From Macrostomum lignano (Eukaryota), in NCBI GenBank assembly GCA_002269645.1, contig NIVC01003883.1, forward strand, positions 7,961-71,960: 64,000 bases of DNA, given 5' to 3'. Shown here one piece after another: positions 3,758-64,000 of this stretch (positions within the stretch are counted from its first letter, which is position 1; each line of letters begins with the position of its first letter). The position numbers and the translations under genes are program-made. The notes beneath the pieces are model-generated. The model had not been told where the DNA came from. It made no database searches and saw only the letters and a list, made by a program, of their open reading frames with translations.

Positions 3758-3801
3758 TCAGCTCCAGTGAACTTGTGATCATCTTCTGTCTTATGTCGCA
3801 G

Positions 3802-4192: not shown

Positions 4193-4299
4193 GTAACTAA
4201 AACGTTTTTTGTGAGATTTTATGCTCAGTCAAAGTTAATCTTCGCTGAGAACTGTGAAAGGGATTTGATTATACGCGTTCATACCTGTCACTTGTCTAG

Positions 4300-4770: not shown

Positions 4771-5419
4771 GGCCAAACATTGTGGGCTGCCATCGTCTTA
4801 AACTGCTCCCGTATCAGCCTTAACTCTTCATTAACTATTTCAAAACGGACATGGCTGTGCTTTCACAGTTAAATTCCCCTTCCATCGGAAGCTTTTTCAT
4901 TTGCCAGAAGTATGTAAGTGTTCAGACTATTCAGAGAGTAGGGGTGGGGACTCGCTCCGTTGCCGTAGCTTACGATTTCCTTTTGAGAGACTCGGATCGA
5001 TTACTCAATACTAATTTCTACCCGCAAGTGAGCTATGGAAGCCGAGACGACGAAAGTTGTCGAAGCTCAAGTCTTAGATACCGTTTCCGTGCCATAAAAA
5101 TGTCAGAATTTTTATTTTTAACACATAACTCATCCTAACTGCTAATCCTGACTTCCTGGAGACACTGAGCCAATTCAAAACCCGATTAATTATTTAGATC
5201 GGCTCGATTCTCTCTGTAAAAAAGATGTTCCACTACGAGCGTACTGTCATTGCACCCATTTTTATTGATGATATCTAGCAACAGCCCGTCAGTGTTTTCT
5301 GTGCCGTAAAAAGCTTTTGCACATCGCTAAGGTACGGGCGACTCAATTACCCAAAATTATTCGCCGTCCACCTTGTTTAAATTTTTTTGGACTTCCACGG
5401 TTGAGTATTATGTACCGGA

Positions 5420-40185: not shown

Positions 40186-40360
40186 TATGGGTATTTTGTT
40201 GTACTTTTTATTTGCAACTCAGTTTGTCATAAATTACCATAGACTAATTTCCTTTTACAGTTCTTTCTCGCAGTTTAGTTTCTCGCCCCAAGCCCTCTCG
40301 TCTTTAACTCATAAAATATATATGCAATTCAAATCTAAGTTAAGTTGTAGTTTCACTACA
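40186..40360 (+). repeat. 5' LTR (175 bp)
   Basis: Matches 44742..44916 with no difference seen by eye. Ends ACTACA. Confidence 0.95.
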
Positions 40361-40363
40361 AAT

Positions 40364-40379
40364 TGGTCCGGTGAGGCGG
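40364..40379 (+). promoter_or_regulatory. Primer-binding site TGGTCCGGTGAGGCGG
   Basis: Starts with TGG 3 nt after the 5' LTR. Resembles the complement of a tRNA-Tyr 3' end (tRNA identity is inference). Confidence 0.6.
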
Positions 40380-40438
40380 CGAAAGATATTACTCTTTACT
40401 CACATAACTCATACTCAATACTCACGAAGACAAATCCA

Positions 40439-41344
40439 ATGACGGACAGTGCAAGCAACAATTCCGCTCCTACACCGCCTACAACCACGCAAGCCGCACC
40501 AAGTTCGGCCGCACCAGTGGTTACACATGCAGTAGGAAACGCCGCCGACACCGCTTCAGTCTCCCTGGCCCACCTGAAGCTGCCAATCTTCTATCGCAAC
40601 AACCCGGAAGCATGGTTTCTCACGCTGGAGGCCCAGTTTATGCTCAACAGGGTGACCAACGAGACCGCCAAATTTTACCACCTAGTCTCTCATCTACCGG
40701 AGGATATCGCGGCTCTGCACTTGTCCGCTCAGACTCCAAAACAGTATGAACAACTGAAAACAGCGATTACATCGACTCTGCAAAAGTCCAAGCAGGAGAA
40801 GGTTTCGGAAGTATTGCAAGTCTCGGACCTCGGAGGAGACAAGCCATCAATCTTCATGCGCAAACTCCGGAGCAAGATGGAGCAGTGCCAGATACAGCCC
40901 GACGAGGAACTCCTCAAGGCCACTCTGATGCGCTGTCTTCCACAGGACCTTCGTATCGCACTGTCGGGATTTCAACAGCAGTCATCCCAGCAAATTTCCG
41001 AGATTGCTGACTCGATGTTGGTCGTCAGAGGCCTTAGCTCTCCATCGCCAGCGACAGTTTGTCCAATTCAGCAGGCCGGTGCAGATAGGACACCCCAACA
41101 GCGCTTTGAGCAAGCTCCACACCGACAAGCACCTGGTAAGCCCACTGGAACAGACCCATTTAAGCCTGGCCAACGCCCCGTCGTTTGCCGCTCACACCTC
41201 TACTATGGCCGCCGTGCTCGGTCGTGTCGCCCGTGGTGCCAGTTTCCCAAGGACAGCTCGCGTCCGATCCGAGTGCTGCATCCCAATGAAAAAACGCCAT
41301 CTCAGTCGCGTTCATCATCACCTTCTCGACAGCCGGAAAACTAA
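40439..41344 (+). CDS. gag: Gag (CHCC type)
   Basis: First ATG downstream of the LTR and primer-binding site within ORF 40187..41344. [15 protein letters not shown]...AQF, LGGDKPS and [18 protein letters not shown] motifs. Confidence 0.9.
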
Positions 41345-41378
41345 GTCGCACTGCGACCGAGGTCGCGGTGCGCAGTGC
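41335..41378 (+). promoter_or_regulatory. -1 ribosomal frameshift signal (slippery GGAAAAC + stem-loop)
   Basis: G GAA AAC directly before the gag TAA. 6-nt spacer, then hairpin GCACTGCG-ACCG-AGGTCG-CGGT-G-CGCAGTGC. pol is in the -1 frame and open through the site. Confidence 0.8.
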
Positions 41379-44300
41379 CGAGATACCATCGACCACCTGT
41401 TTGGAGTTAGATGTTAAAATCAACAATACCTACAGCAAGTTTCTTGTGGATACCGGAGCCTCGGTTTCCATTGTTCCACCTCACCTCGTTAATGCACTCG
41501 TTCAAGATACAAACGTTCGTTTAATTACTGCTACCGGAGCCGCCATACCAGTTCGCGGGTCGGTCCTACTGGATGTCTCAATCCGCGGTTTGCGTCGCGC
41601 CTTCCAATGGACCTTCCTCGTGGCGTCAGTGGTGAAACCCATCATTGGTTACGATTTCTTGGCTCACCATGGGTTAGTTGTCGATTGTCAGCGCAAACAC
41701 GTTCGAGACTCAGAAACAGGACTGTCTACTGTTACCTTGTCAATTTCAAATGTTCATTGTGGCCCATTCACTGTGTCGGTAGAACTGCCACCCAACCTGG
41801 ATTCTCGGACGAGTACGCTGTTGACAAAGTTTGCAGATTGTTTTTCTTTCGTTGAAGGCGGAGCCCTTCCGCCAGCTTCAGAGGTCAAGCATGACACTGT
41901 TCACCGGCTAGACACTGGCAGTGGACAACCAATTCACTTGCGACCCCGGCAACTGCACCCTGCAAAACTACAGGCTGCAAAGCAGGAGTTTCAGCAGCTA
42001 ATCGATGCTGGCTACCTCAGACCTTCCTCAAGCGCTTGGGCGTCACCCCTCCACATGGCACCCAAGGGAGCTGGCTGGCGTCCGTGCGGTGACTATCGCG
42101 AATTGAACAAACGAACAAAGCCGGACAACTATCCGGTTCCACACATTCAAACCTTCACTCGGTACCTACACGGAAGCACTGTGTTTTCAAAGTTAGACCT
42201 TGTTCGCGCCTTTCATCAAATTCCAGTTGCCGAAGAGGATATTTGCAAAACCGCTATCACCACACCGTTTGGATTGTTCGAGTACACACGCATGCCCTTC
42301 GGCCTGAGGAATGCAGCACAAACATTTCAACGCTTCATTGACTCTGTTTTTCACGGACTGTCATTCGTCATCTCTTACATCGATGATGTCCTGATATTCT
42401 CAAAGACTCGTGAGGACCACTACTCACATTTGGAACAAGTTTTGGACCGCCTAAGAACACACGGCCTACAGGTTCATTTGAAGAAGTGCGAATTCTTTCA
42501 GTCCGAGGTAGATTTCCTTGGCCATCGCGTGACTCCTGAAGGAATAAAACCTCTCCAGAAGAAGATCCAAATAATCACTGACTGGCCGACACCCACGGAT
42601 TCGAACGCACTTCGGCGCTTCCTCGGTGTCGTCGGTTTCTACCGTCGATTCGTTCCCAACTTTGCCGACTGCATCTGTCCGCTGCAAGACCTACTCACTG
42701 CATCACTACAGTCAGCAGGAAACTTCCAATGGACAGAGCAGCATCAGAAATCTTTCGAAAACATCAAACTAGCTCTCTCAGAGAGACTACTGCTGCATCA
42801 TCCGGACCCCAACTGTACTGCGTACCACCTGTACACTGATGCATCAGCCGACTGTGTTGGTGCCGTTCTGCATCAAACCTCTTCAACCGGAACGTCACCT
42901 CTTGGCATGTTCAGCAAGAAGTTGTAGTCATCTCAAAGGATGTACAGCACGTTCGACCGAGAACTACTCGCGGCGTACCTGGCAGTGTTGCACTTCCGCA
43001 GCCTCATTGAAGGACTGAGCGTGACCTTGTTCACCGATCATAAACCACTAGCTCAGGCCTTCCACGCCAATCGCACCACTACGTCAGATCGCAATCAGCG
43101 CTACTTGACCGTCTTGTCCGAGTACGTGGCAGATGTCCAGTACATTCGCGGTGCAGACAACGTAATAGCTGATGCCCTTTCTCGACTGCCTGACTTCCCA
43201 GTGAATGATCACGTGTCCAACATCGCAACAGTCGCTGTAGTCGCTGCCCCATCAAGCCAATTCCCTGTTGATCTGCCTAGTATCGCTGAAGCACAACGAC
43301 CGGAGTCGTTCTCAGCTGCACCAAATATTCGATCGTATTCTCTGGACAAAGACGTCGTCGTTTGGTGTGAGACGTCAACGCCGTATCCTCGCCCGATCAT
43401 TCCGCCGTCCCTCCGTGACGCCGTGATTGCCTCCTTCCATCGACTTGGTCATTTCGGCTACCGTAAAACAGCAAAACTCATCACAGAACGTTACTTTTGG
43501 CCCGGAATGCGCAAGTCCATCAAGACCTACTGCTGGAACTGCCAGGACTGCCAACAGAGTAAAGTCACTCGCCACACTGTCTCCCCGCAACAGGCCTTCG
43601 CATTACCATCAAATCGCTTTGAGGCGGTACACATCGATATTGTGGGACCACTTCCACCAGCTAATGCTACCACCTTTGGCCACCAGTCTGCCCGCTACCT
43701 TCTCACGATGGTCGACCGCTCGACTGGCTGGCTAGAAGCTACACCACTGGAATCAATAACCGCGGAAGTAGTCGCCCATGCATTCGTCTCGTCTTGGGTC
43801 TCGCGCTACGGAGTGCCACTGTATGTAATCACTGATCGGGGGCGCCAGTTCGAATCAGAATTCTTTCACTCGGTCTCGTCATCAATTGGTTTTCATCGAT
43901 TGCGCACAACGGCCTACCACCCTCAAACCAATGGCAAGGTCGAGCGAGCTCATCGCACCCTGAAGACGATGCTACGTGCTCGAGGCAATGACTGGCTGAC
44001 AGACCTACCTGTGGCTCTCCTCGCGATGCACGTCGCACCTGACGACCAAGGAATATCACCGTTCACCAGGGTTACTGGCGAGCTTCCGATGGTTCCGCGC
44101 ATCCTAACTTCTGAACCACTCGCCCCAACGGACATTCGGACACGGCTGCAGGAACTGCTGACAGAGTTACCGAGTCCACACGCGAAGACGCACGAACCAC
44201 GGAGCTACGTACCCAAGGACCTGGAAATGGCTGAATTCGTCTGGGTTCGGGTCGATCGCGTGCGGTCGCCGCTCGAGACGCCGTACTCAGGGCCGTATCG

Positions 44301-44547
44301 CGTGAAACAGCGAACTGACAAATTCTTCGTTATTTTCCTACCGTCAGGCAACACCGAATCTGTCTCTATCGATCGCCTCAAGCCGGCGCGACTTTCGCTT
44401 CCGAAGTCGGCTGTTCAGCCGGCCGCGAACTCGCTGCCGGAAAAAGCCGCCAAACCAGAGGAACCGATGGACTCATCACCTCCTAGAGCGACCTCTAGCG
44501 GCCGCCGAGTCCAATTCCGACGCCATAATGATTACATTTATTATTAA
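41341..44547 (+). pseudogene. pol: Pol (protease, RT, RNase H, integrase) with one in-frame TAG at 42925-42927
   Basis: FLVDTGAS protease; YIDD RT; TDAS...FSKKL*SSQRMYSTFDRELLA RNase H; HHCC zinc finger, D-D-E and GPY motifs of integrase. ORFs 41368..42927 and 42940..44547 share a frame. Confidence 0.93.
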
Positions 44548-50442: not shown

Positions 50443-50515
50443 GTGAGCTGTGCGGAGCTGCTTGCTGGTCAAAGTGAGTCGCAAAATCCATTTGATTCAA
50501 TCAAACCGCATGCAG

Positions 50516-51346
50516 GTGCCGCAGGTAACCAGCAGGTTTGGCGTCCTGGCGGTGCCCACCTTTCTGCTTGTGCGCAGGGCGGCTGAGAGCCAGCAGCCGC
50601 AAGTTGTGGACCGCCTGAACGGTGCTGACCCCGCGGCCCTGGCCGCCAAGCTCTCGGCCGCTGTGTCCGCCACCGCCCCGGCTACCGGCGGGGACGTCGC
50701 CGCGGCGCCAAAAGAGACGCAGGCGCAGCTGGAGGCCCGCCTGAAGTCGCTGCTGACCCGCTCGCCAGTCTTGCTGTTCATGAAAGGCTCGCCAGACGCG
50801 CCTCGCTGCGGCTTCAGCCGGCAGATCGTGGAGCTGCTGCGGAAGCACGCCGAGGTGGCGCCTTTCGACCACTTCGACATCCTCACCGACCAAGCCGTGC
50901 GAGAGGGCTTGAAGAAGCTGAGCAACTGGCCAACCTACCCGCAGCTGTACGCAGCCGGCGAGTTGCTGGGCGGTCTCGACGTTGTTCGCGAGATGGACGA
51001 GGCCGGCGAGCTGGGCCCCGCGCTGAAAGCCGCCGTGACGGCCCGCCTGGAGAAGCTGGTCAAGGCCGCGCCAGTCATGCTGTTCATGAAAGGCTCGCCA
51101 GACGCGCCCCGCTGCGGCTTCAGCCGGCAGATCGTGGAGCTGCTGCGCTCCGAGGGCGTCCAGTTCGGCCACTTCGACATCCTGCAGGACAATTCCGTGC
51201 GAGAGGGCCTGAAGAAGTTCAGCAACTGGCCGACCTTCCCGCAGCTGTACGCTGATGGGCAGCTGTTGGGCGGCCTGGATATTGTGCGGGAGATGCAGCA
51301 GGCCGGTGAACTCAAGGAGGCACTGCCGGCCAGTTGCCGAGCTTAG
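50516..51346 (+). CDS. GLRX3: Glutaredoxin-3 exon 2, two monothiol Grx domains
   Basis: Acceptor CATGCAG|GTG at 50515/50516 gives EAEQ|VPQV...AVPTF. Two LFMKG..P.CGFS...NWPT(Y/F)PQLY..G.LLGGLD domains. 73-bp intron. Confidence 0.95.
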
Positions 51347-52293: not shown

Positions 52294-53145
52294 TTACTTT
52301 TCAAAGTCAGAGCCCTCGTCACGCAGCTTTTGCTGCACAGCCCGGAAGAATTGATCTCCGTCGCGCTCGGCAAACTTAAGCATGTCCTGCTGCGCCGCCT
52401 TGGCGAAGGCCGGATCCAGCTCCTTAAGCTCGCGGCCCGTCTGCATGGCCAGCAACTGGTACATGGCACAGCGCTCCAAGTAGTAGGAGTAGTGGAAGGC
52501 CATGGCCGCGGTTTCCGCTAGCACCAGGTAGCCGTGGTTGGCCATCATCAGGCAGGTCTTGTCAGGTGCCAGGCAGGAAGCCAGCCGAGCGCCCTCTGAG
52601 TCCTGGACGGAGACGCCGCTGTAGTCCAGATCGTAGGCAATGCTGTTGAGAAAGTACAGGCAGTTCTGGTGCACCATGCGCAGTCGGGAGTCCTGCAGGC
52701 AGCTGAGGGCGGTGGCGTACGGACTGTGCAGGTGGAAGACCGCCTTGGCCTCGGGCCGGGCCTCGTGCAGCGGTCGGTGGATTGTGGCCGCGGACGTCTC
52801 GGCGCGACCGTTGCCCTCCACTACCCGACCTGCAGCGTCGAGGCCGACCAGGTCGGAGGCACGCACGCGGGACCAGTGCAGGCCGTAGGGCACCAGCAGC
52901 ATCAGCTCGGCTCCGGAGCCGTCAGCCGATGGCGTCATCAGGCTGAGATGGTTGCAGATGCCCTCGTTGTAGCCCAGCTGGTCCAGGGCCCTGTAGGCTG
53001 CCGCCAGGTCCACCCGGGCCTGCCAGTTCTGCTGAGCCGCTGTTGTGGCACCCCGGTTCCCGCTGAGCTGGCGGATGCCGAAGGCCACCGGCTGCAGCAG
53101 CAGGCGGCACCGCGTCCAGCCATTGCGTACTGCTACAGTCAACAT
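52294..53145 (-). CDS. Class II aldolase / adducin head-domain protein with likely mitochondrial presequence, intronless CDS
   Basis: DLAAAYR...EGICNHLS, IHRPLHEARPEAKAVFHLHSPYATALS and MANHG metal-binding His motifs. Arg/Leu-rich N-terminus lacking acidic residues. Confidence 0.9.
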   Translation of the reverse strand: MLTVAVRNGWTRCRLLLQPVAFGIRQLSGNRGATTAAQQNWQARVDLAAAYRALDQLGYNEGICNHLSLMTPSADGSGAELMLLVPYGLHWSRVRASDLVGLDAAGRVVEGNGRAETSAATIHRPLHEARPEAKAVFHLHSPYATALSCLQDSRLRMVHQNCLYFLNSIAYDLDYSGVSVQDSEGARLASCLAPDKTCLMMANHGYLVLAETAAMAFHYSYYLERCAMYQLLAMQTGRELKELDPAFAKAAQQDMLKFAERDGDQFFRAVQQKLRDEGSDFEK

Positions 53146-56100
53146 TTTTCACTCGGCTTAGTATTTAACAGTCTGTCTCACCTCGGCCTAGAAAAGCTTT
53201 AATGGCATTTGTTCTTCTCTTTATCTGGGTAGCAAGATAAGTGTACACTGCTTTGTACACCCTCCGTGCAGAGATATGACACTCTACGCTCGTACACTGT
53301 TGCGAGAATATGAAAATTAGCTAATAATCTTCAAGTATGTCTGTTTATGCACCTGGCTGAGCCTATATTGTGCCCTGCTGCAGCTACAACTCTTGCACCC
53401 CCATTAGCTGACCTGCCCTTCGCCACCACGATTCTGCTATTCCAAGACAGTTATTTGTGCAAAGTACTTTAAAGAAAAATGATGCCTCGGGCTTAGCCAA
53501 TGCTACACTGTCTGCAGTCAGCCACTGTGCAGGATGCAGGACTACCCTTTCAAGTAAAAGCCGTTTTGGAGTCTTTATTGTAGTTTAAAGAAGCCAGAGA
53601 GCCAAAGGGCTTGAGATCCACTTATGAATTGCGCTGAAAATTAAAGAGGACAGAAAGCAGCCGGTCGTGCTGGGCAGGAAGCTCTCAGTCCAAAGGCGAT
53701 CCTTTTTAGAAAGTTCGGCACAAAGGGAGATCGGGATAGGGAAGGGGGCAGCGCGGGCGCCCTGCTGCAGCTCACTCGACCAGATCTATCGCTACGAGAC
53801 AGCCGGTTGCTGTCTTATAAAAAATCTGGCAAGCAATTATAGAGCGGCCATTCCGATGGAAGACACTGCAGTGAACCTGGTAGGCATGTTTGAGGCCATA
53901 AAGCTGGATGTGGGTGGCTATTATCTTTTTATTCCCATTTTCATTGATGGGAGAATATTGAATTCTGCATTCTCTAGGTGTTTTATTGATGCAGCATCCC
54001 AAAATAAACTCTGCCAAGCTTTGGTAGTGAAAAGTACAAACAAGATCTTCTCAATGGAGAGAGGAGGCACGGGCAGAGCACAAGCAAATTTATGCTCTGC
54101 ATGCCCTAGCACTCAGCCTAGCGGAGATTCGCTTACCTGAACTATTATAATATCCGCTGCTGCAATACCTCCGCATGCCAAAGCTAGCATGCAGTGCTCA
54201 ACAGCCCCGCTGCCGCTCATTAAGACAGAGTAGAAGCTGCTCTACTGAGCAACTGCAGGTCAGACGAACTCTGCCCAGCCGAGTCCCCGTGCCCCCCCCG
54301 CCCTGGCCCGAGCGGCCCAGCCAGCGGAGGAAAAGGCAGCGTCTTCCGTTTCGCGAGGCAATTTCCCGTTTTCACGCGTAATGCGAAGTGACACGCCTTC
54401 CCTCCTCTGTCGCGGGTGCGAGAGAGGGGCAGCTGAGACAGGCAGAGAAATAGGCCTCCACAGCGGCTGCAGCTGAGGGGTAGATGATGCTTGGATTCCA
54501 GAGCCTCTAGTCCGATGCAGCGAGTTAATCCGATTGTGTGTCATAAGTTGAGAGCAGGCATCACGGGATCTTGCTGAGCTCCCTCTCGAGTTGCAGCGCC
54601 TTCAAGTCGTGCAGAATTCTTATTAGTAGATTTCTTTTGAATTCACAGTCAGTTATTTCGGCAAAAATACAAATTATAGCGCATGTCCCTCTTGAGCGAA
54701 GCCGTTGCCTTGTTTGAGTCCGAGGCTATGAGCAGGGGGTGTCGGGTTGCTCTCGTGTTGAAGTGGCTCGCAGCTCCAGCCGGAATTCACGCCGGGAGAA
54801 AATTTTGAAGCCGCTGTGCTGCACTTTCTCTCAACCAACGAGTCCAGAGACTCGTGAGGGGCTCAGAAATTCTCATCAGCTTTTCTGTCCCCTGAAGTTC
54901 CGCCCCATCCCCTGTGTCCCTGGGGTGAGGCCGCCGGATTAAGCTGAAATCGGGAGCAGATTAGTGACAACTTCGCCCGGGGCGGGCCGCCAGCCTCAAA
55001 GCAAATTGGGATTAACTTCATCGCGAACGCCGCTCAGGACTGCGTGATGAAGATGCAAACTTTTATAACTCGCAGGGCTGGCTAAGCATGCGGCTGACTC
55101 CATCTCGGAGCAAATTACGCCCACATCGACTCAAGGATTTTTTTAGTGTAGGAGAGGTGAGAGACGGAGGAGCTCTCTGAAGGCTCTCAGCTTTGAAATG
55201 AGTTCTCATGTTCAAAAACGCTTTCTCAATGCATGGGCGGGCAGAGCAATTTTTCGTTCCTAGAGTAGCTGCTGGGATCGGAATCTCTGGAGAATCTCCC
55301 GCCTAAGACTGATGGGACTTTTAAAGCTGCCCCAACGTGATGGCCGAGCGCGGGCTAATTTACCGATCTCTGCTCTTGCATGATCTGCGGCTCCCGCGCA
55401 GCTCGAGAGTTTGAGAAGACAGACAGACAGAAACTAGGAGAAAGTGGAAGAGGCACAGGCAGCTTCTTGGGGAGGGCAAGCGACCTATTACTAGAGACCG
55501 TCACTCCAGCGCGCTGCCGGTGTTCCCGCAGTGGTCCGCTAGTCTGGGACTTCGGAGGGGGGAGGCAGCTCGCGTGTCGCCTTGAGGCAGGCTGGGATAG
55601 ATGAACAGGGAGTGGGCTGCATGCTGCCACTCCCACTTGCCTCTGAGTCTCCCGGCAGGCCTCAAATTCAAAGTTGGGTGCGCTGGCCCGGGAGAGGGCT
55701 GAGGTTTCTCCGGAGCAGCAGGGCAGGCGGCCAAAGAGATTCCTGAGGGAGGGGGGAATCGCAGCAGCCTTCGCGACTCTTCCGCCGCCCCACCCGGGCT
55801 GGCAAACAGAGTGAAAGTACGAGCAGCGCTAGGCCCCCTTCGCTGCCATTCGACTCCGTATGGCACGGCGGGCTTCAATATTAATTTCATGCCACGGGTC
55901 ATGCAGCTCTCCTTATGACTGTCGGTGCTTCATTTTCTTCTGCTCGGTGCTCGGTCCGCATGAGCCTGGCTCTGCTGAAAGTCATCGGTCTCGATTAATC
56001 CTTGATGTAGAAGCGCGCTATGAGCTTGTGGCCAAAGCCTGTGTAAAAGCCGAGACCAACAATGGAGACAAAAGTGCAAGTCTGGGGTTCCGGAGGAACT

Positions 56101-57312
56101 AATGAAATCAGTGCGATAAAGCTCAGCTGCTCAAACTAGCTCGAGGTGATCAGCCTAAGCGGCAATAATTATTCAATTATTTCGGCTTTACCGCTCGCTG
56201 GAGCCACCCAGCCCGTGGACTAAATGCATTAGTAAAAGTGCACCGAAGGGTGACCGCTACTGAAAGCGCACCGCGTCGGCTGGGAGAAACTGCGGATCGT
56301 GTCTGACTCTGCGCTAACATGCCAAGGGCTCCAGCGAAAAGTGCCAGACCTGCCTGTTGCCGACTTCGCTGTGCTGGTTCCCAGTCCGCGAGAATCTGTC
56401 GTCAGGGCTTTGCTAATTGGCTTCGCCCGCCTTATGCGGACGACTTCCTGCCGGCTGCATTCCTCTTGCGGGAGGGGATTGTCGCTTGAATAATCTCTCT
56501 CTTGTTTACCTGTCAGGCTGCGAATCTTTTAGGGGTGTTAGGAGAGGCTGGGGCTGAGGTGCCGGCCAGGCAGAACACAGAACCATTAGGGAGTACTCTG
56601 CAGATAAGCAAGAATTTCCCAGCTGCCTTGTTCCAGGAATTCAGCTGCGCCATCTGTATTTAACTGTCTTCCTGCGTCGAAACTGAATACAAGGCACCTT
56701 GCTGGCTTTCTGCTGAGCAAAAAATTTTCAGCATAGCATGAACAGCTCCCTCAGGCTTTGCACTAACACTGAGTTCTCAAATTCTGCTGCGAGTTTCCCA
56801 CTGAGCCATCGATCACGGCAACAACAATGGGAAGGCGGGTTGTGGCGACCGCTCGCTGGGGGGACAGAGGGCAAGGGGAGACCCTGCCCGTCCGCTCCGG
56901 ATCGCACCGGTTTCCCTGCGTGAGCGCCACCTCACCTCCGACCGTTCATCCCTAAACAGTCTGGCGGGCCAATGGGAGCCGAGCAGGCCCGCGCTGCTCT
57001 GCAGCCCCTCCCAGAGGGGATTCTCCCGCGGCCTTCTGCAGCAACTCAGCCCGTGACCTGTCCATAGCAGCCTCGCCAAGCCTTTGCGCACAAGCGAGCT
57101 GAGCGGCTGTACGCCAGTCCCCGCGGGCTGATACTTCAGAGAGTTGGAATTCGGCCCACCCGAGCGCCGCCGAATTAGCACGGCCATCCAAAGTTTCAGC
57201 GGGAATTCAGACACCGACAGCTCGGATCACCGGCCTGGTCCCAGGGTTTTCCGTCCTCTGTGCGGCAGTTGCAGCGAGGCCTCCAGCCGACCAAAGCCGC
57301 ATGGGCGTCGGG

Positions 57313-57506
57313 GCCCGCGATCGCGCCAGCAGAAGCCGCTAGCCTCCGTCTGAGGCGCCCGCGATCGCGCCAGCAGAAGCCGCTAGTCTCCATCTGAGGC
57401 GCCCGCGATCGCGCCAGCAGAAGCCGCTAGCCTCCGTCTGAGGCGCCCGCGATCGCGCCAGCAGAAGCCGCTAGTCTCCGTCTAAGGCGCCCGAGATGGC
57501 GCCAGC
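57313..57506 (+). repeat. 44-bp tandem repeat (4 copies plus a diverged fifth overlapping the channel start codon)
   Basis: CCCGCGATCGCGCCAGCAGAAGCCGCTAG(C/T)CTCCGTCTGAGGCG with period 44 (CCC at 57314, 57358, 57402, 57446, 57490). Confidence 0.95.
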
Positions 57507-58438
57507 GCGGCTGCTCCTGGTTCTGTTGGCCGTTCTGCTGGCCTGGGTGCAGGTTGCGGACTGCGGCGCCGCACCCAACTACACGAACATCGTGGACCGC
57601 ATCGTGTTCCACATCTTCCGCGGCTACAACAAACACCAGCGGCCCGTGCCCGCTAGCCGGCAGAAGCCAGACGGCACCATAGAAGAGGATTCGACCGACG
57701 TGGACGTCAACATGAAGATTCTCAGCATCAACAAGGTGGACGTCATCAACATGGAGTTTACGCTGGACATGTACCTGCGTCAGTTCTGGAAGGACACGCG
57801 GCTGCGCTGGGATCATTACAAAGACTTCAGTTTCTACAACGAGTCCATCGCCATCCCCGCCAAGAAGGAGCACCTGTGGCTTCCAGACCTGTTCTTCCGT
57901 AATGGAAAGGAGGGTTACCTGCACAAAATGACTCAGCCTAACTATCTGATCAGAGTTGAGCCCGACGGGCAGATCCTGTATTCGCAGAAGGTTACCATGA
58001 AGTTCTCGTGCCAGATGCAGTTGCAGACATTTCCCATGGACACGCAGACGTGCTTCGTGAACATCGGCAGCTACGGATACACCACGAGGAACCTGCTGTT
58101 CAAGTGGAAGCGGGACGGGCTGAAAGACCCGGTGGAGCTGGACGGCTCCATGCAGATTTCCGAGTTCAACGCGCCGACTTTGCTGAGAGCCACGACTGCA
58201 CGCAGGGCAGCGCGACCAGCACAGGGAGCTACGCGTGCCTGAAGGCGATCTTCAAGCTGGAGCGGCAGCTGGGCAGCTACCTGTCCGGTACCTACATCCC
58301 TGCCATCCTCATCGTGGCGGTCTCTTGGCTCAACTTCTGGATCAGTATTGAAGCCGTGCCAGCCAGGGTCTCCCTGGGCCTGCTCACCCTGCTGGGCATC
58401 CTCACCCAGGGCATGTCAGTCATCAACAACCTGCCCAG
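57496..58438 (+). CDS. Anion-selective Cys-loop channel (lophotrochozoan GluCl-like), cassette 1: signal peptide, extracellular domain, M1-M2; 1-nt deletion at about 58174
   Basis: Signal peptide, YLRQFW loop D, WLPDLFFRN loop A, Cys-loop CQMQLQTFPMDTQTC, loop C Cys pair, PAR motif before M2, NLPR|GTAGGC phase-2 donor. The loop-A Arg with no loop-G Arg matches the glutamate-binding arrangement known for lophotrochozoan GluCls. Confidence 0.88.
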
Positions 58439-59396
58439 GTAGGCCATTCTTAGTCAGCTGTTTTCAAGAAAATTGAGGTTACTTTTCTTTCTTAATTGGT
58501 GCCCTTTTTGAGCATTTGACGGCTCACTGAAAGTGCCCATCCAGTCTGCTCACTGCGGTCTCTCATGCCAGTTTTCAGTCTTGCCCTGTCAGCAAGTCAT
58601 GCGCCCGTTTCGCGGGCTCAGGCCCAGAGCTTGTGGTGCTCAGCTCACCCGATATCTAGAAATCCAGCTCCTCTCCGCTTACTCACCCAGCCTCTCTCGG
58701 CATCTTCATTCCCTCCTCAATCCGCGGCTGCATAAGTTCAGAAGCGACCCTAATCCTCAGGCTGAGCCTTCTTTCTCACGGGGACAGGTGAAGAGAGCCC
58801 ACCAGTGCGATCTCAAATCATTATTTATGCAAGCCAGGTGGGCCGCCCGAATCCCAGCTGTAGGCGGTCAGAAAGCCGCGCCCTGCGCCGGACTGTCGCC
58901 GGAAACGGCCCAGTTTCTCCATAAATGCATCAAAACAGCCAAGCTCAGTTTTTTCATCTGGCCTCTGCAAGCCTTTGAGGAGCTTTTCCTCTACAAAGAC
59001 ACAAGCTTCAAGACGCATTCGCTTCTTGAGTGCCTTCTGAACATGCAGGCTGACGGCTGTTGCGATTGCCTATTAATTTCAGCTCCGATGAGAACTGTGC
59101 TCAAAGCCCCGCTTTTCATCTTTTAATATCCGAATCCCCTTTGAGGGCCTCTTTTTCGAGAAGAGGCAGGGAAAGCTCAGGCCAGATTATCCCCTTGGCT
59201 CCGTCATGGCGCTCTCCTAATCCGTCTTGTGCGGGATCAGAGCGGTGGGATCTGAAACTCCTTGCCGATTTCTCTGCGCCGTTAAAATCCAGACGCCAAT
59301 TATGTTCACTTTTCATCCCACATCATCTCTCACGCACCATCCTATGTTTGCATCCCCTTCTCCCGTCTCCTGCATCTCCTCTCCCTGCCTCTCCCG

Positions 59397-59619
59397 CATC
59401 TCATCACACTCTCCTCACTCCACCATCTCATCACACTCTGCTCACTCCACCATCTCATCACACTCTGCTCACCCCACCATCTCATCACACTGCTCACTGC
59501 TCCATCTCATCACACTCTGCTCATTCCACCATCTCATCACACTCTGCTCATTCCACCATCTCATCACACTGCTCACTGCTCCATCTCATCACACTCTGCT
59601 CACTGCTCCATCTCATCAC
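59397..59619. repeat. Pyrimidine-rich minisatellite, about 27-bp unit CACCATCTCATCACACTCTGCTCACTC
   Basis: Direct reading. Unit length varies. Confidence 0.9.
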
Positions 59620-60617
59620 TTCTTCCGTCTCACTATAGCTTCCCACCACCTTGCAAAGTCTAAGCAGCTGCAAGCTCACACAACAGGAGTGGCGCACAGG
59701 GCAGAGTGTACTTTGTGGTGGCGTTGGTTTCGGTAACTGCGGGCTTTGACTTGCGCAGCCTCCAAAATCAGTGGCGATGCACTCTAAATCATTTAGAATT
59801 TGAAAAGCTGTCTCTGTTACTCTGTTGCCATTTATTCCTACCTGTTCTCGTGACAGGGTCGCATGAACTGCAAATATTCCAAAAGCAACTTCACACCTCT
59901 TCAAAGCTATGGGACTCGTTGCTCTGGATTAAAATAGACGAGAACCACTAGCAAAACGTTTCCCCAAAAATCCTTGAAGAAAGTGCTCACTATGTAGGAG
60001 CTGTTTCGCTTTTGAGCTTAAAATGAGAATGACAACATCCATTGGTTCAGTCCCTGTCCCAATGGATTCAACTCTCCTTTCACCCTGATTTTTAATCCCC
60101 GGGCACTCAATAAGCGACGAGATTCGACATGGAATTCAAGACCCGGGCCAGTTTTGCACCGACTACGGTACAGCAGCTGCAAACTGCTGTTTCATGCATC
60201 AGTTCGACCACAGGTCAATAATCATGAATTTATGAAATGCTCAATCAGCCCGTGCGCAAAATGAAGTACATTGGAATAAGCTCAACTGTACCGCTCTAGC
60301 CAAAGCCTAGCCAATTATCGAAATTAAACAGCAAGTAGTTCGTTGAAGAAAGCAAAGTCCTACTCATGCACTCTGCCTGTGTGAGCTGGACTGCTCAGAA
60401 TGAAGCATTTCAATGCTTCCTACTGAAGTCCCCTGAGCCACCGGCTTTGCTACTCATTCTACTGTAAGTAGTCTGCTTGGTTGAAAATTCACTGGATTTT
60501 TAAATGCACCAGCGTGTAAGAAGCTCAATTTTTAGTTAAAGGCTTGCGCGGACCATTCAGATATGGAATTTTTTTTTATTTTTCAAAGAGGGAAGGTTTG
60601 ACTCTCCGACGATTCTT

Positions 60618-61828
60618 ACAGTGTTCAGGTCTATGATTGTGTGCTGTGCACAGTGTTCCATGTCTATGGTTTTGTGCTGTACACAGTGTTCCATATCTAT
60701 GATTGTGTGCTGTACACAGTGTTCCATGTCTATGGTTGCGTGCTGTACACAGTGTTCCATGTCTATGGTTGCGTGCTGTACACAGTGTTCCATGTCTATG
60801 GTTGCGTGCTGTACACAGTGTTCCATGTCTATGGTTGTGTGCTGTGCACAGTGTTCCATGTCTATGGTTGTGTGCTGTGCACAGTGTTCGATGTCTATGG
60901 TCGGTTGTGTGCTGTACGAGTACACAGTGTTCCATGTATATGATTGCGTGCTGTACACAGTGTTCCATGTCTATGGTTGTGTGCTGTACACAGTGTTCCA
61001 TGTCTATGGTTGTGTGCTGTGCACAGTGTTCTATGTCTATGGTTGTGTGCTGTGCACAGTGTTCCATGTCTATGGTCGGTTGTGTGCTGTACGAGTACAC
61101 AGTGTTCCATGTATATGGTTGCGTGCTGTACACAGTGTTCCATGTCTATGGTTGTGTGCTGTACACAGTGTTCCATGTCTATGGTTGTGTGCTGTGCACA
61201 GTGTTCTATGTCTATGGTCGGTTGTGTGCTGTTCGAGTACACAGTGTTCCATGTCTATGGTTGTGTGCTGTACACTGTTCCAGGTCTATGATTGTGTGCT
61301 GTACACAGTGTTCCATGTCTATGTTTGCGTGCTGTACACAGTGTTCCATGTCTATGGTTGTGTGCTGTACACAGTGTTCCATGTCTATGGTTGTGTGCTG
61401 TACACTGTTCCAGGTCTATGGTTTTGTGCTGTACACAGTGTTCCATGTCTATGGTTGTGTGCTGTACACAGTGTTCCATGTTTATGATTGTGTGCTGTAC
61501 ACTGTTCCATGTCTATGGTTGTGTGCTGTGCACAGTGTTCCATGTCTATGATTGTGTGCTGTACACTGTTCCAGGTCTATGATTGTGTGCGGTGCACAGT
61601 GTTCCATGTCTATGGTTGTGTGCTGTACACAGTGTTCCATGTCTATGATTGTGTGCTGTACACAGTGTTCCATGTCTATGATTGTGTGCTGTACACAGTG
61701 TTCCATGTCTATGGTTGCGTGCTGTACACAGTGTTCCATGTCTATGGTTGCGTGCTGTACACAGTGTTCCATGTCTATGGTTGCGTGCTGTACACAGTGT
61801 TCCAGGTCTATGGTTATGTTCTGTACTC
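60618..61828. repeat. 33-bp minisatellite ACAGTGTTCCATGTCTATGGTTGTGTGCTGTAC, about 36 copies
   Basis: Direct reading. Explains the 11-aa periodic ORFs. Confidence 0.97.
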
Positions 61829-62648
61829 AGCTCTTCGGTTGAGCTGCAGATCATTTAGAAAATTAAATTCAATTAAGTAATTTGCTTAGCAGAAGCTCCT
61901 CAAAACCCGGTCCCAGGAACCCAGGTGTGGAACAGGCTGATGAGCTGCAGGTCCAACACCGGCAAAAGTCGGTTCAGTCTCTCTCGCATCGACAGTCGCC
62001 CAGCCCTGAATTGGTGCCAAATTGCTCGACAATTTGCTCCAGCGGGGATCGCATGCGCCAAATTGATTAAAGTAATATGGGAGCTTTTGGCCGAATCCAG
62101 TCAGACCCGGAGTTGCTGAGCGCAGATAAGAGAGGCTGGGCTGAGCTGCAGCTCACCACTCAGAGTGAGGAAGTGGCAGTGCGGACTCACTCTGCTGCTG
62201 TTGTCTGCCTGGCAGCGGTGGGGCTCTAATGGCCGGCCGGTGTGGCTGCTGACAATGCGGGGCAGAGGCCAGGGATAATGAAACCGGGTCGGGGCAGGCC
62301 GGATTAAAGCCGGCTCGCCGAGCCGCTGCGGTCATTGGCTACCAAAGGCCAGGGAAGAGAATGAGCGGAGAGGAAAATGGGAAGCGGATAAGAGTGTTGT
62401 TTGCGCGAGACTGATCCCCAGAACAGATATAGGAAATACTCAAATAGCGACTGCAGCCCGCATGTCCTCCTGGCTCACCGCTACCGGCATTTGAGCTGGG
62501 AGCTAAGCTGCTCTGCTCCCATTAGCCCGGGCTGGCAGGTGCTGACAATTCCTGCTCCCAGCCTCGCACTTGCTGGATAGCCGCTCCCAGGAGAGCGCAG
62601 AGACAGCCGGAGAGAAGAGCATCGAGAGCCAGCCATAGGCCGATCGCG

Positions 62649-63642
62649 ATGCACTTTTGGTGCCGCCTGCTGCCCGCCCTGCTGGCGGTCGCTGCTGTGT
62701 TCGCCACCGAGGAGATTCAGCCGACCAGCGGGTCGGTTCGGCCGAACTACACCAACATCGTGGACCGCATCGTGGAGGCGATCTTCCGCGGCTACAATAA
62801 GCACCAGCGGCCGGTGGAGATGCCGCCGAAGCCGGACGGCCAGCCGGCTGAGCCCGCCCAGACGTGTCCGGCTCCAGCAAGCCGGTGCAGCCATCCACGG
62901 CCGTGGACGTCAACATGAAGATTCTCAGCATCAACAAGGTGGACGTCATCAACATGGAGTTTACGCTGGACATGTACCTGCGTCAGTTCTGGAAGGACAC
63001 GCGGCTGCGCTGGGATCATCGCAAAGACTTCAGTTTCTACAACGAGTCCATCGCCATCCCCGCCAAGAAGGAGCACCTGTGGCTTCCAGACCTGTTCTTC
63101 CGTAATGGAAAGGAGGGTTACCTGCACAAAATGACTCAGCCTAACTATCTGATCAGAGTTGAGCCCGACGGGCAGATTCTGTATTCGCAGAAGGTGACCA
63201 TGAAGTTCTCGTGCCAGATGCAGTTGCAGACGTTTCCCATGGACACGCAGACGTGCTTCGTGAACATCGGCAGCTACGGATACACCACGAGGAACCTGCT
63301 GTTCAAGTGGAAGCGGGACGGGCTGAAAGACCCGGTGGAGCTGGACGGCTCCATGCAGATTTCCGAGTTCAACACACCCGACTTCGCCATTGTGGAGGAC
63401 TGCACGCAGGGCAGCGCGACCAGCACAGGGAGCTACGCGTGCCTGAAGGCGATCTTCAAGCTGGAGCGGCAGCTGAGCAGCTACCTGGCTGGCACCTACA
63501 TCCCCGCCATCCTCATCATTGCCGTCAGCTGGCTCAGCTTCTGGGTCAATATAGAAGCCGTGCCCGCTCGAGTTACGCTGGGCCTGCTCACCCTGTTGGG
63601 TATCCTCACCCAGGCATCCACCGTGATGGCCAACCTGCCCAG
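62649..63642 (+). CDS. Anion-selective Cys-loop channel (GluCl-like), cassette 2: signal peptide, extracellular domain, M1-M2; 1-nt deletion at 62857-62859
   Basis: MHFWCRLLPALLAVAAVFA signal peptide. Adding one C to GCCCAGAC gives EPAPDVSGSSKP and joins ORFs 62649 and 62864. Same motifs as cassette 1. NLPR|GTAGGG phase-2 donor. Confidence 0.9.
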
Positions 63643-63726
63643 GTAGGGACTGCAGACTCTCCTAGGCATCTACCTTGATGGCCAATCTGCCCAAGTAGCA
63701 GGTGCTGATACAACAGGAGGAGGGGG

Positions 63727-64000
63727 CTGCAGGTCTCACACAGGTCTGCAGCTCTCACACAGGTAGGAGGGACTGCAGGTCTCACACAGTTCTGCAGGTC
63801 TCACACAGTTCTGCAGGTCTCACACAGTTCTGCAGGTCTCACACAGTTGTGCAGGTCTCACTCAGGTCTGCAGGTCTCACACAGGTCTGCAGGTCTCACT
63901 CAGGTCTGCAGGTCTCACACAGGTCTGCAGGTCTCACACAGGTCTGCAGGTCTCACTCAGGTCTGCAGGTCTCACACAGTTCTGCAGGTCTCACACAGTT
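63727..64000. repeat. 19-bp minisatellite CTGCAGGTCTCACACAG(G/T)T running off the window end
   Basis: Direct reading. Intronic to cassette 2. Confidence 0.95.

What the first reader, a model, noticed from the sequence alone, without database searches (positions are those of the whole stretch)
57496..63642. Candidate variable-first-exon GluCl locus (protocadherin/UGT1-like architecture for a Cys-loop channel)
Seen: two tandem, same-strand exons of about 950-1000 nt, each encoding its own signal peptide, the entire ligand-binding domain, M1 and M2. Both stop at the identical phase-2 donor (NLPR|GT). In the 4.2 kb between them I find only minisatellites and non-coding DNA, and no exon encoding the expected VSYxKAxDxW-M3-loop-M4 portion. 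Known: Cys-loop subunits need M3-M4, and clustered protocadherin and UGT1A loci splice alternative promoter-driven variable exons onto shared constant exons. Inference: each cassette may have its own promoter and splice to one shared M3-M4 exon set downstream of the window, giving subunit isoforms with different ligand-binding and pore segments. I am not aware of this arrangement for Cys-loop receptors.
Basis: partly seen in the sequence, partly recalled or inferred. Interest (0 to 1): 0.85.

Follow-up and report, generated by a model that had tools for sequence, protein, structure and literature searches.

The report
Two alternative first exons, one channel gene
A flatworm (Macrostomum lignano) chloride-channel receptor gene carries two tandem copies of its large first exon, and both fit one shared last exon lying just past the window, so one locus can probably make two receptor subunits with nearly the same ligand-binding core but different pore linings.

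Summary
The two cassettes are real, at the stated coordinates. Both end at AG|GTAGG after the second base of a codon, and the window holds no M3-M4 exon.

The window matches GenBank contig NIVC01001142.1 (Macrostomum lignano, Mlig_3_7) with 3 mismatches and 60 mostly homopolymer indels. Both cassettes are open in every Mlig_3_7 copy, so the frameshifts are most likely assembly errors.

In Mlig_3_7 a single 481-nt terminal exon (M3, loop, M4, stop) lies 1.5-1.8 kb downstream of cassette 2. It is in frame with both donors. No M3-M4 exon lies between the cassettes in any copy.

GenBank models of this assembly come from RNA evidence. One (PAA70662.1/PAA71747.1, 474 aa) is exactly cassette 1 plus the M3-M4 exon, skipping cassette 2. 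So cassette 1 is not a dead duplicate.

Differences between locus copies are almost all synonymous in all three exons.

No cassette 2 + M3-M4 transcript, and no evidence of separate promoters, was available.

Gene conversion keeps the binding core about 98% identical. The isoforms differ in the N-terminus, strand β9, M1 and M2.

Verdict: a two-member variable-first-exon gene, the mirror image of C. elegans unc-49. New variant of a known kind; moderately interesting.

The parts
57313..57506 (+). 44-bp minisatellite (4.4 copies) immediately upstream of cassette 1. Its last, partial unit contains the cassette 1 ATG (57496-57498). Another locus copy (L004) has 8.4 copies.
   Evidence: TRF; sequence read.
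57496..58438 (+). Cassette 1 (c1): alternative first coding exon. It encodes ATG, signal-like peptide, LBD, Cys-loop, loop C disulfide, M1 and M2 up to 24' (NLPR). It is 943 nt here and 944 nt in Mlig_3_7; one C is missing at 58174, which is most likely an assembly error.
   Evidence: The protein is 100% identical to P0001/P0040 residues 1-315 apart from the frameshift.
58439..58444 (+). 5' splice donor of cassette 1 (AG|GTAGGC), splitting the codon after its second base.
   Evidence: The donor is used in transcript-derived models P0040 (to M3-M4) and P0001 (to a cryptic acceptor in a retroelement).
58439..62648 (+). Inter-cassette DNA, which forms part of the intron of the cassette 1 isoform. 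It holds a 27-bp minisatellite (59397-59619), a 33-bp minisatellite (60618-61830) and an 814-bp unique stretch upstream of cassette 2 (61835-62648), the candidate cassette 2 promoter/5'UTR. There is no M3-M4 exon or relic of one.
62649..63642 (+). Cassette 2 (c2): second alternative first coding exon, with its own ATG and signal-like peptide, a 17-residue longer N-terminus, the same LBD core, M1 and M2. It is 994 nt here and 995 nt in Mlig_3_7; one C is missing in the run at 62857-62859, which is most likely an assembly error.
63643..63648 (+). 5' splice donor of cassette 2 (AG|GTAGGG), splitting the codon at the same point as the cassette 1 donor.
63727..64000 (+). 19-bp minisatellite at the start of the cassette 2 to M3-M4 intron; it runs off the window end. 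The shared M3-loop-M4 terminal exon (481 nt, acceptor ...ccttcacag|GGTTGCCTAC, stop TAG) lies outside the window, about 1.65 kb downstream of 63642 in the matching contig: L003:12850-13330, L004:18157-18637, L001:24824-25304 (L002:12819-13299).
57699..58170 (+). Gene-conversion tract 1. It is about 99% identical to 62902-63373 in cassette 2, and it is flanked by sequence at 55-79% identity. It covers β1 to β8, that is binding loops D, A, E, B and F.
58197..58271 (+). Gene-conversion tract 2, 100% identical to about 63401-63475 in cassette 2 (loop C and pre-M1). It is separated from tract 1 by the diverged β9 patch (58171-58196; APDFAESHD versus TPDFAIVED).

Best explanation
The locus is one Macrostomum lignano gene for an anion-selective Cys-loop receptor of the flatworm ('S-like') glutamate-gated chloride channel clade. 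It has two coding exons. Exon 1 encodes the signal peptide, extracellular domain, M1 and M2. Exon 2 encodes the rest of the M2-M3 linker, M3, the intracellular loop, M4 and the stop.

Exon 1 exists as two old tandem copies, c1 and c2. Each starts with its own ATG and ends at a donor that splits the same codon (M2 24', AG|G). Transcription that starts upstream of c1 gives a pre-mRNA in which the c1 donor splices to the only downstream acceptor, that of the M3-M4 exon. On this model c2, being a first exon with no strong acceptor of its own, is removed with the intron. This step is shown by transcript-derived GenBank models. Transcripts that begin at c2 are inferred to splice c2 to the same exon. 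They could arise from a separate promoter in the 814-bp unique stretch, or by spliced-leader trans-splicing, which is common in this species.

The predicted products are two subunits of 474 and 491 aa with identical M3, loop and M4 and an almost identical binding pocket. They differ in the N-terminus, strand β9, M1 and M2 (2' S/T, 15' G/A, 16' M/S, 17' S/T, 19' I/M, 20' N/A). So they probably differ in assembly, gating, conductance or pharmacology rather than in agonist recognition. Gene conversion between the cassettes keeps the binding core uniform.
For: Shown:
- Both cassettes are Neur_chan_LBD plus the first half of Neur_chan_memb. Joined to the downstream exon they give complete four-TM subunits.
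- c1 is 944 nt and c2 995 nt (both leave 2 spare bases); the shared exon is 481 nt (1 spare base), with the canonical acceptor cacag|G. The sums give 474-aa and 491-aa ORFs.
- The order c1, c2, M3-M4, with no M3-M4 between the cassettes, is seen in the window and in three Mlig_3_7 locus copies.
- GenBank annotation of Mlig_3_7 derives only from RNA-seq and de novo transcripts, using StringTie/TACO, BLAT and TransDecoder (PMC5730564).
- P0040 (PAA70662.1/PAA71747.1), annotated at two locus copies, is exactly c1 + M3-M4.
- P0001 shows the c1 donor spliced to a canonical cryptic acceptor (ttgcag|) inside a retroelement inserted in a third copy.
- Between locus copies, c1 has 6 synonymous and 0 non-synonymous differences, c2 has 12 and 2, and M3-M4 has 4 and 0. 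The chance of 6/6 under neutrality is about 1e-4 to 3e-3.
- c1 versus c2 outside the conversion tracts: dS 0.58 and dN/dS 0.27 in M1-M2; dS 0.75-1.2 and dN/dS about 0.4 in the N-terminus.
- The c1-type M1-M2 is 93% identical to that of a second M. lignano paralogue (P0002), whose LBD is only 83% identical to c1.
- A crude scan found no strong pyrimidine-tract AG acceptor within 500 nt upstream of either ATG, whereas the real M3-M4 acceptor passes the same test.

Inferred: c2 to M3-M4 splicing, how c2 transcripts start, and the functional difference between isoforms.
Against: - I saw no RNA reads myself; the c1 to M3-M4 junction rests on deposited transcript-derived models.
- No c2 + M3-M4 model exists. 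The one c2 model (P0003) has a 13-nt non-canonical gap at the β9 patch and a truncated ORF, which looks like a cross-mapping artefact. The annotation pipeline kept only isoforms at >=0.75 of the major one, so absence is weak evidence, but c2 usage is still unproven.
- The three Mlig_3_7 copies differ by only about 1%, so the selection signal between copies rests on few substitutions. Some of those lie in conversion tracts.
- In the window's own haplotype (L003) the c2 + M3-M4 unit is tandemly duplicated, so that copy has 3 cassettes and 2 M3-M4 exons. Whether this is real or an assembly artefact is unknown.
- The arrangement has been seen in one species only.
Confidence: 0.7

Rival explanations
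1. Only cassette 1 is productive. The gene is c1 + M3-M4, and cassette 2 is an intronic leftover of an old exon duplication that is transcribed only as part of the intron.
For: The only full-length transcript-derived models are c1 + M3-M4. No c2 + M3-M4 product exists in the collection. The c2 model P0003 is defective.
Against: c2 is an open 995-nt frame in all four Mlig_3_7 copies. It has 12 synonymous against 2 non-synonymous codon changes between copies (P about 1e-6 under neutrality). Its M1-M2 is the type closest to orthologues in other flatworms. It lies only 1.5-1.8 kb from the acceptor with a matching frame. The annotation's 0.75 isoform-fraction filter would remove a minor isoform.
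Confidence: 0.12
2. Only cassette 2 is productive. Cassette 1 is a dead or decaying partial 5' duplicate, or makes only truncated two-TM products, and the c1 + M3-M4 models are annotation artefacts.
For: c2 is adjacent to the M3-M4 exon and looks most like orthologues. In one locus copy the c1 donor is spliced into a retroelement and gives a truncated product (P0001). The c1 start codon sits in a minisatellite unit.
Against: P0040 requires an exact in-frame join of c1-specific M2 sequence to the acceptor. The cassettes share only about 12 nt before the donor, which is too short for a chimeric assembly. c1 is open in all copies, with 6 of 6 differences synonymous. M1-M2 dN/dS is 0.27, and the c1-type M1-M2 is conserved in paralogue P0002.
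Confidence: 0.07
3. The tandem arrangement is an assembly or haplotype artefact: the two cassettes are alleles or homeologues wrongly placed side by side.
For: The M. lignano assemblies are highly redundant, with 180-312 Mb duplicated (PMC5730564). The window itself has homopolymer errors. L003 carries a suspicious 5.9-kb tandem duplicate of c2 + M3-M4.
Against: The same c1 then c2 order and flanks occur in four assembled copies from two assemblies. These include a copy with a retroelement insertion and an inverted copy on the same contig. The cassette ends are saturated at synonymous sites and their flanks share no similarity, so they are not alleles.
Confidence: 0.02

Closest known systems
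C. elegans unc-49 GABA-receptor locus (Bamber et al. 1999, as summarised in PMC8841521)
   Same: One Cys-loop receptor locus makes distinct subunits by splicing a shared part of the protein to one of several tandemly duplicated large cassettes. The alternative cassettes include pore-lining segments.
   Different: The polarity is reversed. unc-49 has a common N-terminus spliced to one of three tandem C-terminal copies. Here two alternative N-terminal cassettes (signal peptide to M2) meet one common M3-M4 exon. So the choice must be made at transcript initiation or 5'-end formation rather than by 3' cassette selection.
Nematode avr-14 (GluClα3A/3B)
   Same: A glutamate-gated chloride channel gene that gives two subunits by alternative use of large coding blocks.
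   Different: The avr-14 isoforms share the N-terminal ligand-binding part and differ in the C-terminal channel and intracellular region. The nematode proteins belong to the ecdysozoan GluCl clade, which uses a different arginine.
Variable-first-exon clusters (UGT1A, clustered protocadherins, GCNT2; PMC3325998, PMC1885805)
   Same: Tandem same-strand first exons, each with its own start codon and a 5' donor, are spliced to common downstream exon(s), and intervening variable exons are skipped. The c1 to M3-M4 model that skips c2 follows this logic.
   Different: There are only two variable exons and one constant exon. A promoter for each exon is not demonstrated, and no data exist on the choice mechanism. 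M. lignano also has spliced-leader trans-splicing, which offers an alternative way to start the c2 mRNA.
Mutually exclusive internal exons of insect RDL, GluCl and nAChR genes (PMC2064938)
   Same: Tandem exon duplication diversifies a Cys-loop subunit within one gene.
   Different: Those are short internal exons with both an acceptor and a donor, and they change one loop or one helix. Here about two-thirds of the protein, including the signal peptide, is exchanged and the exons are first exons.
Flatworm 'S-like' GluCls (SmGluCl-1 to -3; PMC3757052, PMC4338433)
   Same: Closest protein family. The loop A arginine (FFRNGK), loop D arginine, loop E serine, loop B and C aromatics, loop C threonine and the PAR anion motif are all present.
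   Different: SmGluCl-2 and -3 are single-exon genes. The Calicophoron orthologue is also a single exon. Hymenolepis has two complete tandem genes, each with its own M3-M4. The split gene with a duplicated first exon has so far been seen only in M. lignano.

Membership tests
Cys-loop (pentameric) ligand-gated ion channel subunit | Neur_chan_LBD domain with a C-x13-C Cys-loop | tested here: met
   Pfam PF02931 scores E=2e-45 (c1) and 5e-44 (c2). CQMQLQTFPMDTQTC is present in both cassettes.
Cys-loop (pentameric) ligand-gated ion channel subunit | Four transmembrane helices M1-M4 in one polypeptide | tested here: met
   This is met only after splicing. M1-M2 lie in each cassette; M3-M4 lie in the shared exon outside the window (L002:12819-13299). 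PF02932 matches, and the protein aligns to GlyR α1 through M3 and M4.
Anion-selective branch (GlyR/GABA-A/GluCl) | P-A-R motif at M2 -2' to 0', and a second disulfide in loop C | tested here: met
   AVPARV(S/T)LG and CTQGSATSTGSYAC are in both cassettes. The best PDB matches are GlyR α1 (E=3e-73) and GluClα 3RHW (E=3e-68).
Flatworm S-like glutamate-gated chloride channels | Loop A arginine plus the loop D Arg, loop E Ser, loop B/C aromatic and loop C Thr motif (PMC4338433) | tested here: met
   PDLFFRNGK (Arg where GlyR has Ala), YLRQFW, ILYSQK, GSYGYT and TSTGSY are all present. The same motifs occur in all flatworm homologues aligned.
Flatworm S-like glutamate-gated chloride channels | Gating by L-glutamate | not testable with these tools
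   This needs electrophysiology of the expressed subunits.
Variable-first-exon gene (UGT1A/protocadherin type) | Two or more tandem same-strand first exons, each with its own ATG and a donor in the same frame | tested here: met
Variable-first-exon gene (UGT1A/protocadherin type) | A single shared set of constant exon(s) downstream, with none between the variable exons | tested here: met
   There is one M3-M4 exon after c2 in L004 and L001/L002, and none between the cassettes in any copy or in the window. Caveat: L003 carries a tandem duplicate of c2 + M3-M4.
Variable-first-exon gene (UGT1A/protocadherin type) | mRNAs joining each variable exon to the constant exon | tested here: inconclusive
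   c1 + M3-M4 is present as transcript-derived models (P0040). No c2 + M3-M4 model or protein was found, and I had no raw reads to examine.
Variable-first-exon gene (UGT1A/protocadherin type) | Each variable exon preceded by its own promoter | not testable with these tools
   No 5'-end or CAGE/RAMPAGE data were accessible. The flanks upstream of c1 and c2 share no similarity.
unc-49-type multi-subunit locus | A common N-terminal exon set spliced to alternative C-terminal cassettes | tested here: not met
   The polarity here is the opposite: alternative N-terminal cassettes with a common C-terminal exon. It works like unc-49 in outcome but is not built the same way.

The most novel reading that the evidence does not exclude
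One Cys-loop receptor locus makes two genuine subunits from alternative first exons. Each has a private signal peptide, N-terminus, M1 and pore-lining M2, and both share M3, the intracellular loop and M4. Gene conversion actively keeps the agonist-binding core identical while the pore and N-terminal segments stay distinct. This would be a natural 'same pocket, different pore' pair, possibly expressed in different cells or co-assembled, and possibly chosen by competition between cis-splicing from c1 and a separate start or spliced-leader trans-splicing at c2.
Probability: 0.55. Interest if true: 0.65.

Novelty: new variant of a known kind. Interest (0 to 1): 0.55.

Why it matters
Cys-loop receptor diversity normally comes from separate genes, from small mutually exclusive internal exons, or, in nematode unc-49 and avr-14, from alternative C-terminal cassettes. 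A locus that swaps the whole N-terminal two-thirds of the subunit (signal peptide to M2) onto a common M3-M4 would be the mirror image of unc-49.

It would show that the break in the M2-M3 linker is a workable module boundary for this protein family. It would also give a natural pair of subunits with the same binding pocket and the same intracellular loop but different M1 and M2. Such a pair is useful for separating pore and gating effects from trafficking effects.

Flatworm GluCls are also candidate anthelmintic targets. M2 15' and 2' are positions that in other receptors affect picrotoxin, alcohol and ivermectin sensitivity (from my own background knowledge, not tested here).

For annotation practice, GenBank currently lists the two cassettes as unrelated 'hypothetical proteins', one of them truncated.

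Tried and rejected
- **Homologue search with the M3-M4 peptide.** It returned only four distant parasite fragments. It gave no M. lignano representative, because the c1 + M3-M4 protein is hidden inside the P0001 cluster. So it could not show which cassettes are joined.
- **Exact look-up of the three predicted c2 + M3-M4 proteins.** None is in the collection.
- **Contig look-up of paralogue P0002.** It is not on record, so I could not see whether that c1-like cassette also sits in a multi-cassette locus.
- **Relic of a private M3-M4 for c1.** tblastn at E<=100 and blastn with word size 7 over the window, plus a comparison of the c1-c2 interval with the region downstream of c2, found nothing.
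- **Flank similarity.** There is none upstream or downstream of the cassettes. So the original duplication unit, and whether a promoter was copied, cannot be reconstructed.
- **A 14-nt 'intron' (GTGTCCGGCTCCAG) that would restore the cassette 2 frame.** I rejected it in favour of a missing C, because Mlig_3_7 has one extra C in that run and reads through it.
- **Gene identifiers Mlig000841 and Mlig026840.** They are not found in any paper text or in the supplements of two M. lignano papers, so no expression data were obtained.
- **Literature search for 'Cys-loop' with 'alternative first exon'.** No papers.
- **Not run.** I did not run structure prediction or the bacterial promoter/terminator scan; I judged them uninformative for this question.

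Full report
**What is in the window**

Reading 57300-64000 and the ORF list shows two same-strand cassettes, at 57496-58438 (c1) and 62649-63642 (c2). Each begins with an ATG and a hydrophobic signal-like peptide: MAPARLLLVLLAVLLAWVQVADC... in c1 and MHFWCRLLPALLAVAAVFATEE... in c2. Each contains a Cys-loop receptor ligand-binding domain (LBD), a loop C disulfide, M1 and M2, and each ends ...AAC CTG CCC AG|GTAGG.

Pfam confirms Neur_chan_LBD and the first half of Neur_chan_memb. The nearest solved structures are glycine receptor α1 (E=3e-73) and C. elegans GluClα.

The 4.2 kb between the cassettes holds a 27-bp and a 33-bp minisatellite and otherwise non-coding DNA. tblastn with three full-length flatworm homologues (E<=10) and with the true M3-M4 peptide (E<=100) finds no M3-M4 coding sequence anywhere in the 64 kb.

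Neither cassette is an uninterrupted frame in the window. The ORF from the c1 ATG stops at 58242, and M1-M2 are in another frame. c2 changes frame near 62858.

The homologue search identified the organism as the free-living flatworm Macrostomum lignano. It returned GenBank proteins from assembly Mlig_3_7 (GCA_002269645.1).

Window 52423-64000 is collinear with contig NIVC01001142.1 (L003, positions 1-11553). There are 3 mismatches and 60 indels, 56 of them single bases and 51 in homopolymer runs. The two indels inside the cassettes are each a missing C, at 58174 and 62857.

In Mlig_3_7, c1 is 944 nt and c2 is 995 nt, and both are open in every copy. The frameshifts are therefore most likely homopolymer errors in the assembly from which the window was taken. 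They are not pseudogene lesions.

**The missing half of the gene**

In the Mlig_3_7 loci fetched through proteins P0001, P0003 and P0040, a single exon encodes the rest of the subunit: VAYIKAIDIW...(M3)...loop...DIDAYSRFLFPACFLLYNCFYWLYYLVLV (M4)...KAEAK-stop. It lies 1.5-1.8 kb downstream of c2.

Its acceptor is canonical (ccgccttcacag|G). It is 481 nt long, so its first base completes the AG| codon left by either donor. The joined products are:
- c1 + exon: 474 aa.
- c2 + exon: 491 aa.

The junction falls in the M2-M3 linker, at M2 position 24' by alignment to GlyR α1.

Mlig_3_7 holds three copies of the locus:
- **L004** (NIVC01001215.1, minus strand): c1, c2, M3-M4.
- **L001/L002** (same contig, plus strand): c1, then a 4.2-kb DIRS-like retroelement plus a duplicated upstream segment, then c2, M3-M4.
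- **L003** (the window's own haplotype): c1, c2, M3-M4, c2, M3-M4. The c2 + M3-M4 unit is repeated with a 5.9-kb period at 98.5% identity.

In no copy is there an M3-M4 exon, or a relic of one, between c1 and c2.

**Is cassette 1 used?**

The GenBank annotation of Mlig_3_7 contains no ab initio models. It was built from RNA-seq (STAR, StringTie, TACO), BLAT-mapped de novo transcripts and TransDecoder (PMC5730564).

The cluster look-up revealed P0040 (PAA70662.1 and PAA71747.1; Mlig000841.g2 and .g5; 474 aa). It is exactly c1 followed by the M3-M4 exon. It is annotated at L004 (span 8,637 nt) and at L003, and in both places it skips c2.

The two cassettes share only about 12 nt before the donor. 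A chimeric assembly across this junction is therefore unlikely.

In the copy with the retroelement, P0001 shows the c1 donor spliced to a canonical cryptic acceptor (ttgcag|) inside the element's gag region. This is independent evidence that the c1 donor is active.

If anything, c1 + M3-M4 is the form that survived the annotation's filter, which kept only isoforms at >=0.75 of the major one.

**Is cassette 2 used?**

This is the weaker link. The only c2 model (P0003, Mlig000841.g6) starts at the c2 ATG. It carries a 13-nt non-canonical gap exactly at the β9 patch where c1 and c2 differ, and this truncates its ORF. I read that as a cross-mapping artefact.

No c2 + M3-M4 protein exists in the collection.

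The case for c2 is indirect:
- It is adjacent to the acceptor and its frame matches.
- It is open in all four copies.
- It has 12 synonymous against 2 non-synonymous codon changes between copies.
- Its M1-M2 is the type closest to orthologues in other flatworms.

**Selection and history**

Differences between locus copies:

| Exon | Synonymous | Non-synonymous |
|---|---|---|
| c1 | 6 | 0 |
| c2 | 12 | 2 |
| M3-M4 | 4 | 0 |

About 23% of sites are synonymous. The neutral chance of 6/6 is about 1e-4, or about 3e-3 allowing for a strong synonymous bias.

c1 versus c2 is a mosaic:

| Region (alignment codons) | DNA identity | dS | dN/dS |
|---|---|---|---|
| Signal peptide and N-terminus (1-84) | 58.5% | about 1.2 | 0.38 |
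| Central LBD (85-243) | 98.5% | 0.04 | 0.19 |
| β9 patch (244-252) | 55.6% | about 1.6 | 0.33 |
| Loop C to pre-M1 (253-277) | 100% | 0 | n/a |
| M1-M2 (278-332) | 78.8% | 0.58 | 0.27 |

This pattern points to an old duplication with two gene-conversion tracts. Two observations between copies support conversion. One c2 copy carries c1's TAC (Tyr) where the other c2 copies have CGC (Arg). An ACG/ACA polymorphism is shared between the cassettes at the same site.

The flanks of the two cassettes share no similarity.

The c1-type M1-M2 (SWLNFWIS..., RVSLG, QGMSVINNLPR) is 93% identical to that of another M. lignano paralogue (P0002). The LBD of P0002 is only 83% identical to c1. So the c1 type is a conserved class, not decay.

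Orthologues in parasitic flatworms are built differently:
- Calicophoron has a single-exon gene.
- Hymenolepis has two complete tandem genes.
- SmGluCl-2 and -3 are single-exon genes (PMC3757052).

Among the genomes examined, the split gene with a duplicated first exon was seen only in M. lignano.

**What the isoforms would differ in**

All residues of the flatworm 'S-like' GluCl glutamate motif are identical in both cassettes: loop A Arg in FFRNGK, loop D Arg, loop E Ser, loop B and C aromatics and loop C Thr (PMC4338433).

The differences are:
- The signal peptide, and a 17-residue longer N-terminus in c2.
- The β9 patch: APDFAESHD in c1, TPDFAIVED in c2.
- Five M1 and pre-M1 residues.
- M2 positions 2' (S/T), 15' (G/A), 16' (M/S), 17' (S/T), 19' (I/M) and 20' (N/A).

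I infer that the isoforms differ in assembly, gating, conductance or pharmacology, not in agonist recognition. Ligand identity itself is untested.

**Comparison with known systems**

- **unc-49 and avr-14.** The closest functional parallel is C. elegans unc-49, where a common N-terminus is spliced to one of three tandem C-terminal copies. Nematode avr-14 isoforms likewise differ in the C-terminal channel part (PMC8841521). The present locus has the opposite polarity.
- **Variable-first-exon genes.** Structurally it is a minimal variable-first-exon gene in the sense of UGT1A and the clustered protocadherins (PMC3325998, PMC1885805). It has only two variable exons, and a promoter for each is unproven. 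M. lignano trans-splices 39% of its genes, so c2 mRNAs might instead start by spliced-leader addition.
- **Insect receptors.** RDL, GluCl and nAChR genes diversify by short internal mutually exclusive exons (PMC2064938), which is a different mechanism.
- **Literature.** A search for Cys-loop with 'alternative first exon' found nothing. The gene identifiers appear in no searchable paper.

**Verdict**

It is unproven for c2 usage and for promoters, and it overstates the difference in the binding domain.

This is a new variant of a known kind, the mirror image of unc-49. It is moderately interesting and can be tested directly with existing RNA-seq.

Noticed in passing
window 5420-31652: A 26-kb satellite array of a 20-bp unit (ATGACTGAAACTGATGCCTC, about 1,318 copies, 83% matches) fills 40% of the window. 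A 57-bp minisatellite (38 copies) follows at 32477-34649.
   Followed up: no
window 40187-44547 (+): Three consecutive long ORFs (385, 519 and 535 aa) look like the gag, protease/reverse-transcriptase and RNase H/integrase genes of an apparently intact LTR-type retrotransposon. This is judged from sequence motifs only.
   Followed up: no
window 50450-51346 (+) and 52294-53145 (-): The neighbouring genes are a protein with two monothiol glutaredoxin repeats (CGFS) and a class II aldolase/adducin-domain protein. The same two neighbours flank the locus copies on NIVC01001215.1 (Pfam hits).
   Followed up: partly
window 57313-57506; L004:9642-10011: The cassette 1 start codon lies in the last partial unit of a 44-bp minisatellite (unit ...GCGATCGCGCCAGC...; start ...GAGATGGCGCCAGC...). 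Copy number differs between locus copies (4.4 versus 8.4), so the 5' end of this exon borders hypervariable DNA.
   Followed up: partly
L001:16061-19961 (NIVC01001215.1): A DIRS-like retroelement (gag-like 405 aa, RT 603 aa, tyrosine-recombinase-like 280 aa) is inserted between the cassettes in one locus copy, together with a duplicated 33-bp minisatellite and pre-c2 segment. The c1 donor is spliced to a cryptic acceptor inside it, giving the 381-aa GenBank protein PAA70668.1.
   Followed up: partly
L003:8467-14367 versus 14424-20345 (NIVC01001142.1): A tandem 5.9-kb duplication (98.5% identity) of the unit [33-bp minisatellite, c2, 19-bp minisatellite, M3-M4 exon, 3' flank] occurs in the contig that matches the window. 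Whether it is real or an assembly artefact is undecided.
   Followed up: partly
NIVC01001215.1:51026-79662 (reverse) and 89717-122520 (forward): The whole locus, with its glutaredoxin and aldolase neighbours, occurs twice in inverted orientation on one 335-kb contig. The two c1 and M3-M4 exons are identical; the c2 copies differ at a few sites. This may be a recent inverted segmental duplication or a mis-join of redundant haplotypes.
   Followed up: no
window 52423-64000 versus L003: The window differs from the GenBank contig almost only by single-base homopolymer indels (60 indels, 3 mismatches). Any ORF-based reading of this window should expect roughly one spurious frameshift per 200 bp overall.
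   Followed up: yes
P0002/P0041/P0042 (UniProt A0A1I8J7E9 and relatives, older ML2 assembly): There is a third, c1-like cassette in M. lignano (82% identical to c1; M1-M2 93%). Its predicted proteins also end right after NLP(R/S) without M3-M4. This hints that another locus may have the same split, or multi-cassette, structure. Its genomic position could not be retrieved.
   Followed up: partly
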